Positions 51,267-64,000 of a DNA stretch of 64,000 bases are shown one piece after another. Location: positions 32,488,001-32,552,000 of the forward strand of contig NC_135661.1 in NCBI RefSeq assembly GCF_964188315.1, read 5' to 3'. Below the pieces are notes generated by a model. It saw nothing but the letters and a program-made list of their open reading frames with translations, had not been told where the DNA came from and ran no database searches. Within the stretch, counting starts at the first letter, position 1; every line of letters begins with the position of its first letter. A program made the position numbers and the translations under genes. The DNA is from Podarcis muralis. Taxonomy: Eukaryota.

Positions 51267-52110
51267 CATAGAATCATAGAATCATAGAGTTGGAAGAGAC
51301 CACAAGGGCCATCGAGTCCAACCCCCTGCCAAGCAGGAAACACCATCAGAGCACTCCTGACATATGGCTGTCAAGCCTCTGCTTAAAGACCTCCAAAGAA
51401 GGAGACTCCACCACACTCCTTGGCAGCAAATTCCACTGTCGAACAGCTCTTACTGTCAGGAAGTTCTTCCTAATGTTTAGGTGGAATCTTCTTTCTTGTA
51501 GTTTGGATCCATTGCTCCGTGTCCGCTTCTCTGGAGCAGCAGAAAACAACCTTTCGCCCTCCTCTATGTGACATCCTTTTATATATTTGAACATGGCTAT
51601 CATATCACCCCTTAACCTCCTCTTCTCCAGGCTAAACATGCCCAGCTCCCTTAGCCGTTCCTCATAAGGCATCGTTTCCAGACCTTTGACCATTTTGGTT
51701 GCCCTCCTCTGGACACGTTCCAGTTTGTCAGTGTCCTTCTTGAACTGTGGTGCCCAGAACTGGACACAGTACTCCAGGTGAGGTCTGACCAGAGCAGAAT
51801 ACAGTGGCACTATTACTTCCCTTGATCTAGATGCTATACTCCTATTGATGCAGCCCAGAATTGCATTGGCTTTTTTAGCTGCCGCGTCACACTGTTGGCT
51901 CATGTCAAGTTTGTGGTCAACCAAGACTCCTAGATCCTTTTCACATGTACTGCTCTCAAGCCAGGTGTCACCCATCTTGTATTTGTGCCTCTCATTTTTT
52001 TTGCCCAAGTGCAATACTTTACATTTCTCCCTGTTAAAATTCATCTTGTTTGTTTTGGCCCAGTTCTCTAATCTGTCAAGGTCGTTTTGAAGTGTGATCC
52101 TGTCCTCTGG
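51267..52110 (-). mobile_element. Young 5'-truncated CR1 LINE with uninterrupted ORF2 C-terminus (ORF 52044-51346)
   Basis: ...[11 protein letters not shown]...EKDLGVLVD...[16 protein letters not shown]...RRLRGDMI...; (ATTCTATG)n tail; 9-bp duplication gttgcaatt. Confidence 0.95.
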
Positions 52111-52659
52111 CCTCTGAAGCAGCTAAAAGTTGCAATTGAGGCAGCTAAAAAACTCCACTTTGCTGGCCCCACCCCACCGAGTGTACGACCCCCTGGAGTC
52201 ATCGGACGCCCAGGACCACAGACCTTCAAGCACCCTAAATCTTGTCTCTCAGCAGCTCCTGATCCTTGTGATATAATAATGCTAATATGTGCGTACCTTG
52301 CAGGGTCGTTTTAAGGATCAATAAGATCATGTATGTGGAAGGTTGCTAGATACTACAGTATATATAAGCATAAGCAGAAAGAGTTTAGCATGAAATTAGA
52401 GTTGCTTGGGAAGGCAGGAGAGACAGCTTTAAAGGAAGAAAACAAGTGGAAACACGTTTATTCATACTGGAATTTAAATTGTCGTAAACTTCCCCTAGGT
52501 TTGCTGATAAAGGGTGGGCAAGACATTAAAAACAACACCACTTATCATATGTGTGTGTTAATATACTTAACATATTTAAAGCTAATATATTTATTGAATA
52601 ATTATGTATTGCCTATCTATAATAAAGTATTATTATTTTCCAAAGGGGAGGGGAGACGT

Positions 52660-53720
52660 CCACTCTAAGCATTTCCAAGGCAAAACGAGGAAGGAGGCGC
52701 GCGTGGAAAGCGGACAGATTGAATCCTCCGCAAAAGCTTCCCGCTTCTTCCGGCAGAGCTCCGGTGCCTTTGGCACACCGGGAGTCAGGAGGCGCAGCCG
52801 CAAAGCTCTTCACCTGCAGAACACCTGCCTGTTAAAAAGCAGCTGTTGCAAGCACAGGAGCCCTGACAGCGGCGCGGGAGAAAGACACGCTAGCTCTACA
52901 GTTTGCAGCTGGGGCTTCCGCGCCCCAGATCGGCCGACATTTCGGAAACTTGAGCAAGCTCGGTGCAGTTGCAACCGCGGCTGTATGTCGGGACGCAAAG
53001 CGAGGCCCAGATCCGCCCTCTGTGATCCCCCACGGGACCCGCGGCTGGGCGGGAGCGACCTCGGCGACCCGGCTGCGCCGAGGCGGAGTTGTGCGCGCAG
53101 CCCCGGGCCGAGGGAGGAAGGCTTCCGGATCCGGGGGCGACGGAGAGTAGGAGTTTGCAAAGGGGGTGGGGGAGAGACTCGAGGAAAGCGCCCGGTTTGC
53201 CTGCCGGGGCTGGACGGAAGGGGCTCCCCATCCCCTCCGAGGCTGCTTTGCAAAGGCGCCGACTACATCTCCCATCACCCCTCGCTCACGGCCGTGCGTG
53301 CTGGGAATTGTAGTCCAAAAATTAAAGAAGCACATTCGCAAGGACTAACGGGTTTCCAGGGCAAGCCTTTCCAGGCTGGTTAAAAGGGCTTCCTCTCAGG
53401 TAAGTGAGAGTTTAGGCTTGCGGACTAGCAGCTTGAGTGGACTGGGACTCTCCTTTGCAGGAAGCGCGCAGCGATTCTGAACGATCAGCTCTGCTTCTCT
53501 GAAAATCACGGCTAGACACTACGGATTTCTCTTGCTTTGACCCCGCTGATGACAACAGAAAGACCGTAGCTAGCAATGCGTGGTCAGTTGTCTGTCCGCT
53601 GCTGGAGGCTGTGGACTGACATGCAGGGAGGGACTTGTTACAGCCGAGATTTCTCGTAATGCAAAGATCCTTGGCTGATACTTGGATAGGGAGGGCGGGG
53701 GCTGAACGACAGAAGCCCCG
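52660..53720. promoter_or_regulatory. C19orf12: CpG island / promoter of C19orf12, with probable non-coding exon 1 ending at 53399
   Basis: CpG-dense. CAG/GTAAGT consensus donor at 53400. Two inverted ACTACAnnTCCC motifs at 53262-53314. Confidence 0.75.
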
Positions 53721-56070: not shown

Positions 56071-56110
56071 TTTACCTTTCCATATGCTTTCAAGGTGTAA
56101 GCTACGCAAG

Positions 56111-57227
56111 ATGCCGGTCAGCGTGAACGACGTCATGCAGCTCCTATGCCATGTGTCTGAAGAGCGGAAAATGAGGGCGGCCTTCAAGCATTCAGGGCGA
56201 GGAGCGATCGTGGCTGGGGCAACTGCTTTCTTGGGAGGCTTGGTGGGCGGCCCGCCTGGCATAGCCGTTGGTAAGTGAGGCTCTCTTTCAAGCAGAGGGT
56301 CTGTAGAAACTACCTTGCCGTTTTGCTTTAGAGCTAGCGATTCCCAAACTTTTTTGGACCCCGCAACCCAACTTGGCTCCATAGTGGTTTGCATGGCACT
56401 ATCAAATTCAAAACGGCAACAACAAATTGCACATGTATTCAAAATCCAATTGAAACTATTTGTTTTTTGTTAATTCAACAAAGTTCATGCCCTTGGTCCA
56501 GTGATACCAGCTTTTCAAAAGTCTGATAGTCTTTTACTCTTCCAGCACTGCCCTGCACCTGCCTCTTAACAATTCCTGGGGGAGGGGAGAGTACTGCCCA
56601 ATTTGGGGAACTAGTGAATTAGAATGTTAATATCCTGATTTTGCTCAAAAACAGGAAACAAAAAACCAGCCCTGCAAGATGGGGTGGCAACAATAAATCC
56701 ATAGCATAAGCCTAACCATGTCTACTCAAAAATAAGGCCTGTCAAGGTCAATGGAGCTGACTCCAAGGTTAGGGTTGCAGCCTTAATAATCAGCAACCAG
56801 TATGTGAAACAAAATACCCTAAAGCCAAATTTTGGTCTTCATCCCCATCAGGAGGTTTGCACCCTGGATTCTGTGCATCTGCACATGATTTGCCTCATGG
56901 GGGTGTTTGGCATTGGTGAGTGATGTGTGGCTTAAAATACATTTCTGTGCTGCTTTCCTAGGGGGCGCTGTTGGGGGCTTGCTTGGTGCCTGGATGACCT
57001 CTGGGCAGTTTCAGCCCATCCCTCAGATCATCCTGCAACTGCCTCCCACGGAGCAGCAGCGGCTGTACGACAACGCCTACGCCATCATTGGGAATTTAGA
57101 TTGGACCGATACAGCGCAGCTCATAGCCCTGGTCATGGGCAACAGAGCCATCCAAGACCAGCTGTTTTGCATGCTGACGAGCTACATCACTAACGAGCTT
57201 AGAGCTGAAATCAAGTATGAAAACTAG
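56111..57227 (+). CDS. C19orf12: C19orf12 orthologue (MPAN/NBIA4 protein), 141 aa; join(56111-56270, 56962-57227)
   Basis: [77 protein letters not shown]...[10 protein letters not shown]. Glycine-zipper region, 160+266 nt, GT-AG, phase 1. Colinear with the 141-aa human isoform as I recall it. Confidence 0.96.
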
Positions 57228-60599: not shown

Positions 60600-63123
60600 G
60601 AGGGGGGGCTTTATTTTTGCAAACTGTTGTGGAAATGTGGACAGCTGAATTTAAGACGGGGAAAGCAATGAGCTGAGAAAACTGACATATTCTCCCATCC
60701 CTACCTCTGAGCAAACATGCTTTAGGATTACACTGTAAGCCTTTCTAATTCTAACACATATAGCAGGTCCTTCTTTCGAAACACCCTATTTCACCAGCCT
60801 ATCCATAAAATGAAATGTTTTGACGACTGATCATCTGGGGCCTGCAATTATGTGAGTGGCTGATGTGAAATCATGAGGCTGTAATGGACTGGGGAGGGGG
60901 GGAGAGAGAGAACCACCTAATTTAGGCAATACTGAGCTATATGGACCAGTGGTCTGACTGGAATGAGTGGTACTGGGTTACCCAACAGACAGACCAAAGC
61001 ATGTGCTTAGTGCACCAGCAAAGCAGGGGCTCCCTTACCCCACAAAAAACCAAAGTTCTGAAGGAATTTGGCATATGATATTTCAAAGGGAGGAAAGCAT
61101 CAAAGTAGTCATTGGGAAAGATTTATTACACCTATTTACACGCCACTAGATTTTTCTGTTCTCTTTTTATTACTTATCCCACCTGTACCAGGGACCATCC
61201 TGTCAACACAGATCGAAATAATGGGAAGAAATCAGATCCTGTCAAGTTTAGTAATAAATTGATGTTTTATTATTAAAGATTTATTCTTATGAGTTATACA
61301 AACTTTGTTTCTTTCCCCTTTCTAATCTATGTATGCAGAAAAACAGAATACGCTGTGTAAGTTGTTTTGTTTATTGTTTTTATTTTGAATTGCATATGGA
61401 GAGCGGGGAGACGCCATGATCTTTTCAGCGCTTAGGGCTTCCAAAGGCAGCTTCCTGTGTTACAGCATTGATTAAACAAAAAACAAAAGAAAATAATAGG
61501 TAAAATTAATCACACCAGAAGGATGGAGATTGGACAGTTAAGCAAAAGTCTCCATAGGTCAGGTGAGTCTGAGGAAGTATTTGATTAGGTAAGTGGGAAA
61601 GGGGTGGACCCATCAAGGTCTTCTGCAAGATAATTCCAAATCAGCAAGACAGGGCTGGTGGGATTGCTTGAGGACGGAAGAAACCTCTGGACTGAGGAAC
61701 CTTGTGAAGTCTAAGGAGCAAAGGTAAGACTCTAGAGACCAATGAAGATATTGGAAGTGGGTGAGCTAACAGCAGCATGGCTGAGGACTGAGTGGCTTCA
61801 AGGTAAGGCTGAAGACTTTGTGCTGGATACAGGAACAGGCAAGAAGCCAATGCAGGGTTTGGTTTAAGGAGGCGGGGTTTTCTACAAAGCTGCTCAGGCC
61901 CAACCTTGATTGGGTCAGCAAAGAGGAGCACCTGTTTTTGAAAAACCTGAATGTGAGTTTTCTACAAAGCTGCTCGGGTTCATTTCCTCATTTGCATCCT
62001 GAATTAGAGGAACCATCTCCTGAAGTGGTCCAGTTTGAGGAAATATTGTAGCCAAAGAAGTTTTCTTTAGGAGTCAGGCAATTGGGTAAGTGATATTGTA
62101 ACCCTCTTAAGCTATTAATATTACTTTGATGTTTCCTAAACACGTTTACTTGGAAGTGAGGACCTCTGACTTCAATGAGGGTTTCACCCCTGTAAATGTG
62201 CTGCTGTCTTAGCTATTGACCTTAACCTCTTTAATGGGCTTTCTGTTAAAGGAAACAAGATAGGATTTGCTATTTACTGAGACACAAAGGGGGAAGGGAG
62301 ATTTGTTTGGCTTAGTTTCACCTTTTCAGATTATATTTCTTTTTGAGAGTTCTTGATTATAGCAAATAAAGACATGCCCATACCCTGACAACTAATTATC
62401 TTACTAAATTGCAAAGGTTGCAGTCTTACCTGCAGTTGGGCGTAAGCCCCCATGAACTGTGTTGTAAGACTGTAAATTAAATGGAGGCATGGGGTGTGAG
62501 AAGCCTTGAAAATATGAGAACCATAAGGCAATATACACCTTTTTTGGCACCAGTATAAATGGGTTATTGTCTGCTATGTTGGGTTTTGTATGCCAGTCAA
62601 AACAAGGGGTGGTATTCAGTGCTTGTCCTGCTCAGAGGAGAATCATTGAAGTTAATAGACATGCCTCACTTCATTCATGAATTTCAGTGGGCCTTCTCCA
62701 AGTAGGACTTAGTTGAGTACAATGCAAGAAGCAGATTTCTAGGTCTGTGGTTGTGAGAGAGTAAAGCATGGCAAATGTGACCAACTATATTCATCCCAAG
62801 CAATGTGGTTCAATACCGAGGGAAGAGTCATGAGACTTGTTCAGCAGCAGATAACTGTGGGGTGTCTAGAAGAAAAAGGCTCTCATTTTAGAGGGCTTGC
62901 TTTGCATGCAGAAGGTCCCAGATTCAGCTCCCAGCATCTCCAAGCAGGGCTGGGAGAGGCTCCCTGGCCGAAGAGCTGCTTCCATTAGGAGCTCTATTCT
63001 GCCATATACTATGTCAAGTCATTCCTAGATGCGCCAAATCGCCTGACTCTGTATATGGCAGCATCTTGTGGGCATGCTCATTGAAGTGGATCTTCCTTTC
63101 TGCTTTCAAGGTATAAGCCAGAC

Positions 63124-63286
63124 ATGTCGCCGATTGCCGTGAATGAGATGATGCAGCTTCTGGGCCGACTATCTGATATATGGGGAATGAAGGCTGCCAC
63201 CAAGCAACCCAAACGAGTTGCCCTTGTGGCAGGTTTGGGGGCCCTGTTTGGGGGCTTGTTGACCGGACCAGTTGGCATTCCAGTAG
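63124..63286 (+). CDS. C19orf12-like: Diverged tandem C19orf12 paralogue, first coding exon (exon starts 63111); last exon lies beyond the window
   Basis: MSPIAVNEMMQLLGRLSDIWGMKAATKQPKRVALVAGLGALFGGLLTGPVGIPVG. Same TGCTTTCAAG acceptor as copy 1, phase-1 donor G/gtaagt, 27/53 aa identical to copy 1 by hand count. Confidence 0.85.
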
Positions 63287-63397
63287 GTAAGTATGTGCTT
63301 CCTTATGAACTGGAAATCTCAGCGCAAAATTGCCTTGCCTATTTAATTAAAGCGGTAGTGAATGGGTATGGAGGCATACATGTTATGGTTAGCGCTG

Positions 63398-63583
63398 GGG
63401 AAGGGCCGTGGCTCAGTAGTAGAGCATCTGCCTTGCAGGCAGAAGGTTCTTGGTTCAGTCCCTGGAAACTCCAGTTAGGGCTGTCTGAAGCCCTGGAGAG
63501 CTGCTGCCAATCAATGCAGAAGATGATACTGAGCAAAATGGACCCATGGTTTGACTTAGTATAAGGCAGTTTCCTGTGTTCCT
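63398..63583 (+). mobile_element. tRNA-derived SINE in the intron of the C19orf12 paralogue
   Basis: A box gtggctcagtagtag, B box ggttcagtccc, tail gcagtttcctgtgttcct. Confidence 0.7.
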
Positions 63584-63763
63584 GTCCAGGAAGAAGTCTT
63601 AACTCCTTTCATGGACAATCACCCCAAATTAATGGCAGTCAAAGACCTGGTTCACACATCACAGTGAGCCCAAACAATTATCTACTCCGAGTGCTGCTTG
63701 GTTTCTCCCTGGTCCTTTTAGCTTGGCAGCTAAGCCCTGCTCAGTGTGTTGTCCTAACCCAGG

Positions 63764-64000
63764 ATGAGCCAACAGTGTGACGCGGCAGCTAAAAAAGCCA
63801 ATGCAATTCTGGGCCTCATCAATAGGAGTATAGCATCTAGATCAAGGGAAGTAATAGTGCCACTGTATTCTGCTCTGGTCAGACCTCACCTGGAGTACTG
63901 TGTCCAGTTCTGGGCACCACAGTTCAAGAAGGACACTGACAAACTGGAACGTGTCCAGAGGAGGGCAACCAAAATGGTCAAAGGCCTGGAAATGATGCCT
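63764..64000 (+). mobile_element. Young CR1 fragment, nearly identical to the 51267-52110 copy, truncated by the window
   Basis: atgagccaacagtgtgacgcggcagctaaaaaagccaatgc... matches the reverse complement of about 51670-51905. Confidence 0.92.

What the first reader, a model, noticed from the sequence alone, without database searches (positions are those of the whole stretch)
63111..63292. Diverged C19orf12 paralogue carrying Pro at the position of the human disease allele A63P
Seen: about 51% identity to copy 1 over this exon, yet open frame, conserved acceptor, phase and donor, and retained zipper glycines (141-aa numbering G36, G42, G43, G47, G50, G54). GGPPGIAVG becomes TGPVGIPVG. Established: human p.Ala63Pro (Ala52 in the short isoform) causes SPG43/MPAN-spectrum disease; from memory, P60 and S39 are also reported MPAN sites, and both are changed here (V, P). 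The fly homologue Nazo is a STING/IKKbeta-induced antiviral factor. Inference: a neofunctionalised, fast-evolving copy (altered localisation, lipid or antiviral role) that tolerates or compensates a human-pathogenic substitution.
Basis: partly seen in the sequence, partly recalled or inferred. Interest (0 to 1): 0.7.

Follow-up and report, generated by a model that had tools for sequence, protein, structure and literature searches.

The report
Fast-evolving third C19orf12 gene in wall lizards
The exon is real: it is the first coding exon of an intact, already annotated, lizard-specific extra copy of the disease gene C19orf12. In wall lizards this copy carries as its normal residue the proline that causes disease in the human gene, which is an interesting natural variant but not a new kind of gene.

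Summary
Window 63111-63286 is a C19orf12-family exon (Pfam PF20721, E 6e-11). The exon is 52% identical to copy 1, with the same acceptor, phase and donor.

The window is Podarcis muralis. The exon matches RefSeq XP_028596101.2 ("protein C19orf12 homolog", 145 aa) exactly. That gene's last exon is intact, about 3.1 kb beyond the window end.

The gene (C) lies between the canonical gene (A, copy 1) and a second 141-aa paralogue (B). C descends from the B lineage, not from copy 1. It was found only in lacertids: one copy in three Podarcis species, two in Lacerta and two in Zootoca.

C evolves fast (omega about 0.7-1.4, against 0.1-0.3 for A). Even so, all seven copies keep the ORF, splice sites, in-frame indels and a conserved exon 1. 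Within Podarcis, C is under purifying selection.

Pro53 (human Ala63/Ala52) is specific to Podarcis among 113 family proteins compared. It arose after the neighbouring Pro (human Pro60) had become Val. RNA evidence is weak but shows splicing. An antiviral role is untested.

Verdict: a functional, rapidly evolving paralogue of moderate interest.

The parts
61560..61723 (+). Conserved promoter-proximal block and non-coding first exon of gene C. The exon's 3' end is at 61723 with donor GT at 61724-61725; its 5' end is not determined.
   Evidence: Zootoca P0014 residues 2-16 match 61677-61721 at 93% identity. In P. muralis the Zootoca ATG is CGG, with a TGA three codons upstream, so this exon is untranslated here. 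The block 61560-61830 is almost invariant in all 7 lacertid C copies, and the donor is conserved.
61740..61802 (+). Candidate alternative first exon, with donor GT at 61803-61804.
   Evidence: The donor CAAG|GTAAGG is conserved in all 7 copies. The P. lilfordi model P0024 starts here; in P. muralis the frame is closed by TGA. Run X24 has about 2 stranded reads over 61730-61832. RefSeq lists two transcripts with the same protein.
63111..63286 (+). Exon 2, the first coding exon of gene C: 13 nt of leader, ATG at 63124, then codons 1-54 and the first base of Gly55.
   Evidence: Identical to residues 1-54 of P0022, which is XP_028596101.2.
63280..63282 (+). Codon CCA, Pro53, equivalent to human Ala63 (152-aa form) and Ala52 (141-aa form).
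   Evidence: Alignments. The change GCA>CCA is placed on the Podarcis stem by parsimony. The human equivalence comes from the table in PMC12384588.
63227..63227 (+). Non-synonymous polymorphism T/C: codon 35 is GTG (Val) in the window and GCG (Ala) in the sequencing runs.
   Evidence: T>C appears in 3 of 3 reads of X23 and in the contigs of X1 and X7. Ala35 is the state in P. raffonei, P. lilfordi and the older P. muralis model.
63287..64000 (+). Start of intron 2, which is 3076 nt in all. It holds a tRNA-derived SINE at about 63400-63580 and a CR1-like LINE fragment at 63764-64000. The last exon lies outside the window, at what would be positions 66363-66637.
   Evidence: L002 is identical to the window over 10877 nt. 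The last exon is L002 13240-13514, with acceptor ttttctag and stop TGA.
56095..56270 (+). Copy 1 (gene A, canonical C19orf12), first coding exon, ATG at 56111.
   Evidence: (PF20721, E 4.6e-19). It is 92.6% identical to Elgaria canonical P0018.
56962..57227 (+). Copy 1 (gene A), last exon, stop TAG.
   Evidence: (PF20721, E 1.5e-31).

Best explanation
The exon is the first coding exon of a complete, separately transcribed gene of Podarcis muralis (RefSeq 'protein C19orf12 homolog', 145 aa). It is the middle gene (C) of a same-strand tandem array A-C-B of C19orf12-family genes. A (copy 1 in the window) is the orthologue of the human gene. B is an older squamate duplicate. C split from the B lineage and was found only in lacertids. 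C keeps the family's parts: N-terminal helix, glycine-zipper hydrophobic hairpin with a proline turn, C-terminal helical domain, and intron position and phase. It has replaced the conserved juxtamembrane motif KHSGRG with KQPKRV and changes its protein 5-10 times faster than A. Shown: the ORF, splice sites and first exon are maintained in seven copies of five species. Shown: within Podarcis the protein is under purifying selection. Inferred: C is a functional membrane-hairpin protein of ER, mitochondria or lipid droplets whose cytosolic contacts and hairpin turn have been remodelled, through neofunctionalisation or a strongly relaxed and shifted constraint. Pro53 arose on the Podarcis stem (GCA>CCA), together with Gly47>Thr. 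By then the second proline of the ancestral PP turn (human Pro60) was already Val. The hairpin therefore again has two prolines, now four residues apart instead of adjacent. I read this as a context-dependent (compensated) tolerance of the change that is harmful in the human protein. That last step is inference.
For: Family membership: PF20721 scores E 6e-11 for the exon and 1.4e-34 end to end for P0022. Gene model: the exon equals P0022/XP_028596101.2, and the window equals L002 with 0 mismatches in 10877 nt. The last exon is intact, with AG acceptor and TGA stop. Array: A-C-B in three Podarcis species; A-C1-C2 in Lacerta agilis, where B lies outside the fetched locus; A-C1-C2-B in Zootoca. 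All 15 genes reconstructed have intact ORFs and GT/AG sites. Origin: the squamate B+C clade has support 99/99 and the C clade 100/100, with a stem of 0.67 substitutions per site. The AU test rejects C with A (p=0.021) but not C with lacertid B (0.12) or C with Elgaria_2 (0.44). The K-(T/K)-K-P tail is shared with Elgaria_2, and its remnant is still readable after the stop codon of lacertid B. Rhineura has only A and B. Rate: NG86 omega is 0.65-0.9 between genera (1.25-1.7 against Lagi_C2), compared with 0.09-0.35 for A. ML omega is 1.37/1.08 for exon 2/exon 3 (0.98/0.66 without Lagi_C2), compared with 0.13/0.26 for A. Function: in a neutral simulation, P(all 7 ORFs intact) = 0.002. At least 4 indel events are all in frame. 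The exon 1 block is nearly invariant. Within Podarcis there are 6 synonymous and 3 non-synonymous changes, p=0.007. The hairpin glycines are invariant and its hydropathy is kept. Pro: it occurs only in Podarcis C among 113 family proteins, where 99 of 104 non-C proteins have Ala. RNA: the X1 contig follows the exon to 63287 and then leaves the genome for 243 nt, as expected for a splice to an exon that starts with GG. The X7 contig covers 63110-63280 only. X23 has 3 reads in the sense orientation.
Against: Omega between genera cannot be told from 1. Substitutions inside the C clade hit family-conserved positions as often as other positions (23/58 against 43/87, p=0.31). Both are what a gene freed from its ancestral constraint, or drifting toward loss, would show. 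For Podarcis alone, ORF retention is not significant (P=0.65), and the within-Podarcis test rests on 9 changes. Expression is very low in the two true RNA-seq runs: 3 reads in X23 and none in X24, from about 12% of each run. No exon 1-exon 2 junction was seen, and the run-on letters of the X1 contig were not shown, so the splice partner is inferred. Both AlphaFold2 attempts gave pLDDT below 50 over the hairpin, so nothing structural is known about Pro53. The compensation idea (P50V then A53P) is untested.
Confidence: 0.7

Rival explanations
1. Gene C has lost the ancestral function and is evolving close to neutrally. On this reading it is a still-open, weakly transcribed ORF on the way to becoming a pseudogene, and Pro53 is simply an unselected hit at a once-critical site.
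For: Omega is about 1 between genera. Family-conserved sites change as often as others within C. The conserved KHSGRG motif is lost. Read counts are very low. Copy number varies between 1 and 2.
Against: Seven intact ORFs are unlikely under neutrality (P=0.002, substitutions only). All indels are in frame, and all GT/AG sites and the first exon are conserved. The hairpin glycines are invariant in all C copies. Within Podarcis there are 6 synonymous and 3 non-synonymous changes, p=0.007.
Confidence: 0.18
2. Gene C is in an evolutionary conflict, for example as an inducible antiviral or immune effector like fly Nazo. On this reading omega of about 1 or more, and the repeated tandem duplication, reflect positive or diversifying selection, and Pro53 is one adaptive change.
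For: ML omega is 1.37 in exon 2, and pairwise values reach 2.4. C duplications are lineage-specific. The first exon is not in a CpG island (GC 0.42 at 60-62 kb, against 0.52 at the promoter of A). Baseline expression is low. Nazo is reported as an effector of the STING-IKKbeta pathway (PMC12384588).
Against: No comparison is significantly above 1; on the Podarcis stem, P for an excess of non-synonymous changes is 0.87. No ISRE, NF-kB or GAS motif is conserved in the 530 nt around exon 1. Nazo's antiviral role has no known vertebrate counterpart according to the same review. Nothing was tested under infection.
Confidence: 0.1
3. The exon is not a gene of its own. It would be an alternative, mutually exclusive exon 2 of copy 1, or an orphan duplicated exon.
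For: It lies on the same strand only 5.9 kb downstream of the stop codon of copy 1. It has the same acceptor and phase as copy 1's exon.
Against: It lies downstream of the last exon and stop codon of copy 1. It has its own conserved first exon and its own last exon with a different tail. It is called as a separate gene in five genomes.
Confidence: 0.02

Closest known systems
Human C19orf12 (MPAN/NBIA4, SPG43) and its lizard orthologue, copy 1 of this window
   Same: Same Pfam family PF20721 end to end. Same two-coding-exon structure, with the phase-1 intron after the ...(A/P)V|G codon. Same glycine-zipper hydrophobic segment with a proline turn and same C-terminal helical domain. Tandem position on the same strand.
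   Different: Only about 50% identity. KHSGRG is replaced by KQPKRV, and Lys20 by Trp. It has one extra N-terminal residue and a TKP tail. The PP turn is changed to P-V-G-I-P in Podarcis. Protein change is 5-10 times faster. It is not the orthologue: it falls in the B+C clade, and the AU test rejects grouping it with A.
Squamate 'B' paralogue (141-144 aa; for example P. muralis XP_077787635.1, Lacerta XP_033012595.1, Rhineura, Elgaria and Pogona second copies)
   Same: The closest lineage on the tree. Shared states are GPVG (the Pro60-equivalent is Val), AGLGA and SEV-x-GM. The KKP-type tail is shared with Elgaria_2, and its remnant is readable behind the stop codon of lacertid B.
   Different: B keeps KHSGRG and Ala at the A63-equivalent site, and has a much shorter stem on the tree (0.16 against 0.67 substitutions per site). 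Within Podarcis B's omega is about 0.3, from only 6-9 changes. C was found in lacertids only and has a very long stem branch (0.67).
Other lineage-specific C19orf12 duplicates: four zebrafish co-orthologues, and Drosophila CG3740 and CG11671 (Nazo)
   Same: The family duplicates repeatedly, often in tandem, and the copies diverge in role. Nazo, but not CG3740, restricts picorna-like viruses and controls triglycerides (PMC12384588, PMC10883546).
   Different: These are independent duplications. Nothing links lizard C to Nazo beyond family membership, and no functional data exist for any sauropsid copy.
Compensated pathogenic deviations: a human disease residue that is wild type in another species or paralogue (general phenomenon; from my own knowledge, Kondrashov et al. 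2002)
   Same: A residue that causes recessive disease in the human protein is the fixed state here, in a changed sequence context (neighbouring P>V and G>T).
   Different: Here it sits in a fast-evolving paralogue, not in the orthologue. Tolerance may therefore reflect a changed or relaxed function rather than true compensation.

Membership tests
C19orf12-like protein family (Pfam PF20721) | Profile match above the curated threshold | tested here: met
   The exon alone scores 42.8 bits (cut-off 30, E 6e-11). Full-length P0022 scores 119.7 bits, covering profile positions 17-162 of 163.
C19orf12-like protein family (Pfam PF20721) | Conserved gene structure: a coding exon ending in phase 1 after ...(A/P)-V, then one last coding exon | tested here: met
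   The donor G|GTAAGT and the acceptor ...ctag|GG are at homologous positions in A, B and C of five species.
C19orf12-like protein family (Pfam PF20721) | Glycine-zipper hydrophobic segment with one or two prolines (hairpin) | tested here: met
   G43, G44, G48, G51, G55 and G59 are invariant, and P49 is present. Mean Kyte-Doolittle hydropathy of residues 33-66 is 1.33, against 1.29-1.51 in A and B. The proline criterion is quoted from PMC12384588.
C19orf12-like protein family (Pfam PF20721) | Conserved K-H-S-G-R-G motif before the hydrophobic segment | tested here: not met
   It reads KQPKRV in Podarcis, and 8 of 9 C-clade protein sequences share Q, P, K and V at these positions. Among 104 non-C proteins, S occurs in 100 and the two G in 95 and 99. 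This is a conserved feature, not a formal family criterion.
C19orf12-like protein family (Pfam PF20721) | Localisation to mitochondria, ER or lipid droplets | not testable with these tools
   Needs tagged expression. Structure prediction gave pLDDT below 50 over residues 25-70.
Orthologue of human C19orf12 (canonical lineage A) | Groups with canonical squamate and amniote C19orf12 on the tree | tested here: not met
   C falls in the B+C clade (99/99). Holding C with lacertid A costs 12.3 lnL, AU p=0.021. Copy 1 of the window is the orthologue, 92.6%/80% identical to Elgaria A.
Pseudogene | Disrupted ORF or lost splice sites | tested here: not met
   The ORF is intact and GT/AG sites are kept in all 7 C copies. 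P=0.002 under neutral simulation.
Pseudogene | dN/dS not different from 1 | tested here: inconclusive
   Omega is 0.65-1.7 between genera but about 0.15 within Podarcis, p=0.007 on 9 changes.
Pseudogene | No transcription or splicing | tested here: inconclusive
   There are a few sense reads and two contigs. One contig leaves the genome exactly at the donor. No junction read was listed.
Nazo-like STING/NF-kB-induced antiviral effector | Induction by infection, or inducible promoter elements | tested here: inconclusive
   No conserved ISRE, NF-kB or GAS motif in the 530 nt around exon 1. Induction itself cannot be tested here.

The most novel reading that the evidence does not exclude
Lacertid lizards have recruited a C19orf12 hairpin protein into a fast-evolving, copy-number-variable role such as host-pathogen conflict, parallel to fly Nazo. 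On this reading the Podarcis change (PP turn to P-x-x-x-P, with the human-pathogenic Pro) is an adaptive re-shaping of the membrane hairpin, and it shows which second-site change makes A63P tolerable.
Probability: 0.1. Interest if true: 0.6.

Novelty: new member of a known kind. Interest (0 to 1): 0.3.

Why it matters
C19orf12 is an orphan disease gene whose molecular function and membrane topology are still debated. A natural, selectively maintained paralogue keeps the glycine zipper but rewrites the KHSGRG motif. In one genus it also carries the patient mutation A63P next to a lost Pro60. This provides a ready-made set of variants for testing what the hairpin turn and the juxtamembrane motif do. 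It also shows that squamates have two to four family members, not one, which matters when lizard or bird genes are used as 'the' orthologue in conservation-based variant interpretation. In itself, a disease residue fixed in a diverged paralogue is a common phenomenon.

Tried and rejected
(1) The bacterial-type promoter/terminator scan is irrelevant for a vertebrate gene and is discarded.

(2) Self-BLASTN of the two gene regions was run to find a shared first exon or intron. Only the coding exon and a LINE fragment match.

(3) AlphaFold2 of P0022 was run with 40-row and 89-row alignments. Mean pLDDT was 41.6 and 52.6, and the hairpin (residues 25-70) was below 50. No statement about Pro53 is possible and no fold search was run.

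(4) Omega was estimated on sub-regions of the last exon. The C-terminal 46 codons have few amino-acid changes but also few synonymous ones, so omega there (0.74-1.08) is unstable and gives no evidence of a constrained domain.

(5) I tested whether C spares family-conserved sites. It does not (p=0.31).

(6) A motif scan for ISRE, NF-kB and GAS around exon 1 found none conserved.

(7) Earlier notes of the scan held nothing on this locus.

(8) The mutually-exclusive-exon idea is rejected on gene structure.

(9) A direct duplication of copy 1 is rejected by the tree and the AU test.

The public protein P0022, identical to the exon, was used instead. dN/dS was computed exon by exon with the split codon dropped. 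The lacertid A rows in the tree are last-exon translations only. The N run at 38642-38774 was left alone.
Full report
**Observation**

The sequence shows an acceptor AG at 63109-63110 and an ATG at 63124. An open frame of 54 codons plus one base follows, then a donor G|GTAAGT with GT at 63287-63288. The exon is therefore 63111-63286.

The peptide matches Pfam PF20721 'C19orf12-like' on its own, at E 6e-11 and 42.8 bits against a cut-off of 30. Inside the window it matches one other place, 56114-56275, at 51.9% identity over 54 residues, E 3e-8. That place is the first coding exon of a canonical C19orf12 gene. Its last exon ends with a stop codon at 57227.

Acceptor context, phase and donor are the same in both copies. 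At the DNA level only the exon is still alignable, at 69% over 106 nt. The duplication is therefore old.

**What the exon belongs to**

An exhaustive HMMER search with the exon found one cluster clearly closer than all canonical proteins: a 147-aa Zootoca vivipara protein. A word search from it found relatives in Podarcis and Lacerta.

The exon is identical to residues 1-54 of P0022. P0022 is XP_028596101.2/XP_028596102.2, 'protein C19orf12 homolog' of Podarcis muralis, 145 aa. The locus that encodes it (L002; assembly GCA_964188315.1, record OZ076960.1) is identical to the window over all 10,877 shared bases. The window is thus P. muralis, and the gene is already annotated.

The gene's last exon lies 3,076 nt downstream of the donor, beyond the window end. 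It has a good acceptor, 91 codons and a TGA stop.

A conserved non-coding first exon ends at 61723, with a second conserved donor after 61802. In Zootoca this exon carries an ATG. In P. muralis that codon is CGG and a TGA lies upstream, so translation starts at 63124.

I built no joined spliced model from the window. The public protein was used instead.

**The array and its history**

Three Podarcis species have the same-strand array A (141 aa) - C (145 aa) - B (141 aa). Lacerta agilis and Zootoca have A - C1 - C2; Zootoca's B lies just after C2, and the Lacerta locus fetched ends before B. All 15 genes reconstructed have open frames and GT/AG splice sites.

A careful ML tree of 43 family proteins splits squamate genes into two clades:
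- a canonical clade, which holds lacertid A, the snakes, and one copy each of Elgaria, Rhineura and Pogona;
- a B+C clade with support 99/99, which holds the second copies of Rhineura, Elgaria and Pogona, lacertid B, and the C clade.

The C clade itself has support 100/100 and a stem of 0.67 substitutions per site.

AU tests gave these results:

| Grouping held together | p(AU) | Result |
|---|---|---|
| C with lacertid A | 0.021 | rejected |
| C with lacertid B | 0.12 | not rejected |
| C with Elgaria's second copy | 0.44 | not rejected |

The lacertid A rows in this tree are last-exon translations only.

An independent character agrees with the tree. C and Elgaria_2 end in K-(T/K)-K-P. In lacertid B a TAA stop sits on the first of these codons, and (K/T)-P-stop is still readable behind it.

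The amphisbaenian Rhineura has only A and B, with no C-like exon in the 7.5 kb between them or the 10 kb downstream.

So C came from the B lineage, not from the neighbouring copy 1. It arose either on the lacertid stem or earlier with later losses; this is unresolved.

**Selection**

dN/dS was computed exon by exon, without the split codon.

| Comparison | Method | Omega |
|---|---|---|
| A, between lacertid species | NG86 | 0.09-0.35 |
| A, exon 2 / last exon | ML | 0.13 / 0.26 |
| C, between genera | NG86 | 0.65-0.9 |
| C, against Lagi_C2 | NG86 | 1.25-1.7 |
| C, exon 2 / last exon | ML | 1.37 / 1.08 |
| C without Lagi_C2, exon 2 / last exon | ML | 0.98 / 0.66 |

dN for C is 5-10 times that of A. 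No value for C differs significantly from 1. Substitutions within C also hit family-conserved positions as often as other positions.

Four observations argue against that:
- Neutral simulation on the ML trees leaves all seven ORFs intact in only 0.2% of runs, counting substitutions alone.
- At least four indel events are all in frame.
- The block around the first exon is almost invariant in all seven copies.
- Within Podarcis there are 6 synonymous and 3 non-synonymous changes, p=0.007.

On the Podarcis stem there are 7.5 synonymous and 18.5 non-synonymous changes. This gives omega of about 0.75, not different from 1 in either direction.

I conclude that C is a maintained coding gene under a strongly relaxed or shifted constraint. 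Positive selection is possible but not shown.

**The disease-site residues**

Numbering in C is the 141-aa numbering plus one. The variant table of PMC12384588 lists p.Ala63Pro (=Ala52Pro), p.Pro60Leu (=Pro49Leu) and p.Ser39Phe (=Ser28Phe). PMC13753252 describes A63P as a recessive allele that tends to be milder.

| C residue | Human equivalent | State in C | State in non-C family proteins (n=104) |
|---|---|---|---|
| Pro53 | Ala63 / Ala52 | Pro only in the four Podarcis sequences; Lacerta and Zootoca keep Ala | Ala in 99 |
| Val50 | Pro60 / Pro49 | Val in 8 of 9 C sequences, Ile in one | Pro in 79; Val in 12, including lacertid B and Pogona_2, so the change predates C |
| Pro29 | Ser39 / Ser28 | Part of a C-wide rewrite of KHSGRG to KQPKRV | Ser in 100 |

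By parsimony, A>P (GCA>CCA) and G47>T (GGC>ACC) both fall on the Podarcis stem.

The hairpin glycines are invariant and hydropathy is kept. The ancestral adjacent PP turn thus became P-V-G-I-P. That the earlier loss of one proline makes the new one tolerable is my inference. Two AlphaFold2 runs gave pLDDT below 50 over the hairpin and cannot inform this.

**Expression**

One reads call was available:
- In stranded RNA-seq run X23 (about 12% read), three reads lie on the exon in the sense orientation. Similar sparse reads lie in the introns.
- X24 has none on the exon and about two over 61730-61832.
- An X7 contig of 171 nt covers 63110-63280 and nothing around it.
- An X1 contig of 705 nt runs from intron 1 (62834) through the exon to 63287 and then continues for 243 nt that do not match the intron. 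The last exon starts with GG, so a match through 63287 is what a splice predicts.

The run-on letters were not displayed and no junction passed the listing threshold. Splicing at the donor is therefore likely, not proven. Expression in these samples is low.

All runs carry C at 63227 (Ala35), where the assembly has T (Val35). This is a non-synonymous polymorphism.

**How it likely works, and comparison**

C has every structural hallmark of the family except the KHSGRG motif. It should therefore insert into ER, mitochondrial or lipid-droplet membranes through the glycine-zipper hairpin, with both ends in the cytosol. Its cytosolic N-terminal and juxtamembrane surface, and its tail, are altered.

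C is a member of PF20721 but not the orthologue of the human gene. Tandem, diverging duplicates are known in this family:
- Zebrafish has four co-orthologues.
- Flies have CG3740 and Nazo. Nazo has both a lipid role and a STING-IKKbeta antiviral role (PMC12384588, PMC10883546).
- The tree here also shows bird-specific duplicates.

Nothing here links lizard C to antiviral defence. No inducible-promoter motif is conserved near exon 1.

**Verdict**

It is also already annotated. The Pro is a Podarcis-specific change in a fast-evolving paralogue of the B lineage. A disease residue fixed in a diverged paralogue is a familiar phenomenon.

No paper in the held library links C19orf12 to lizards. The three-lineage picture of squamate C19orf12 genes therefore appears undescribed there. 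Interest is moderate to low (0.3).

Noticed in passing
window 56095-57227 (+), with a GC-rich block at about 52600-53400: The canonical C19orf12 orthologue (gene A, 141 aa) is complete in the window. The likely CpG-island promoter and first exon lie about 3 kb upstream (GC 0.52). Gene C has no such island.
   Followed up: partly
L002 18974-20664 (about 8.1 kb beyond the window end): A third family gene, B (141 aa, XP_077787635.1), follows C. B-type second copies also exist in Rhineura, Elgaria and Pogona, so most episquamates sampled (except the snakes) have at least two C19orf12 genes.
   Followed up: yes
L002 20662-20673; L004 and L005 equivalents: Behind the TAA stop of lacertid B the frame still reads (K/T)-P-stop. 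This matches the KKP/TKP tail of Elgaria_2 and of C, so B seems to have lost a 3-residue tail through a nonsense substitution.
   Followed up: partly
window 63227: T in the assembly and C in all four runs laid. This is a Val35/Ala35 polymorphism in gene C; Ala is the state in the other Podarcis species.
   Followed up: yes
window 62863-62965, 63481-63583 and 60906-61008: These are tRNA-derived SINE fragments with very high depth in the RNA-like runs (up to 366). A 'goes back' joint 63508>60942 with the same 27 inserted letters appears in all four runs. This is most simply explained by reads from other, intact copies of the repeat family, not by a rearrangement here.
   Followed up: partly
window 51346-52044 (-) and 63764-64000 (+): Two CR1-like LINE 3' fragments carry a reverse-transcriptase C-terminal ORF of 232 aa. 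They are 98% identical to each other over 237 nt, which points to a young LINE family.
   Followed up: no
window 9690-10400: A very GC-rich block has long overlapping spurious ORFs on both strands. It is probably a CpG-island promoter of a neighbouring gene, which was not identified.
   Followed up: no
window 38642-38774: A run of 133 N (gap or masked).
   Followed up: no
L003 16511-19159 (Lacerta agilis C2, P0017): This is the fastest-evolving C copy (omega 1.25-1.7 against all others). It has Gly37>Ser, a GGG insertion and an extra AGT insertion. It may be either decaying or diverging further.
   Followed up: partly
tree: Penelope, Galbula and Indicator rows: Several birds carry independent, lineage-specific C19orf12 duplicates. 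The Indicator 'C19orf12-like' pair sits on a 0.22 branch.
   Followed up: no
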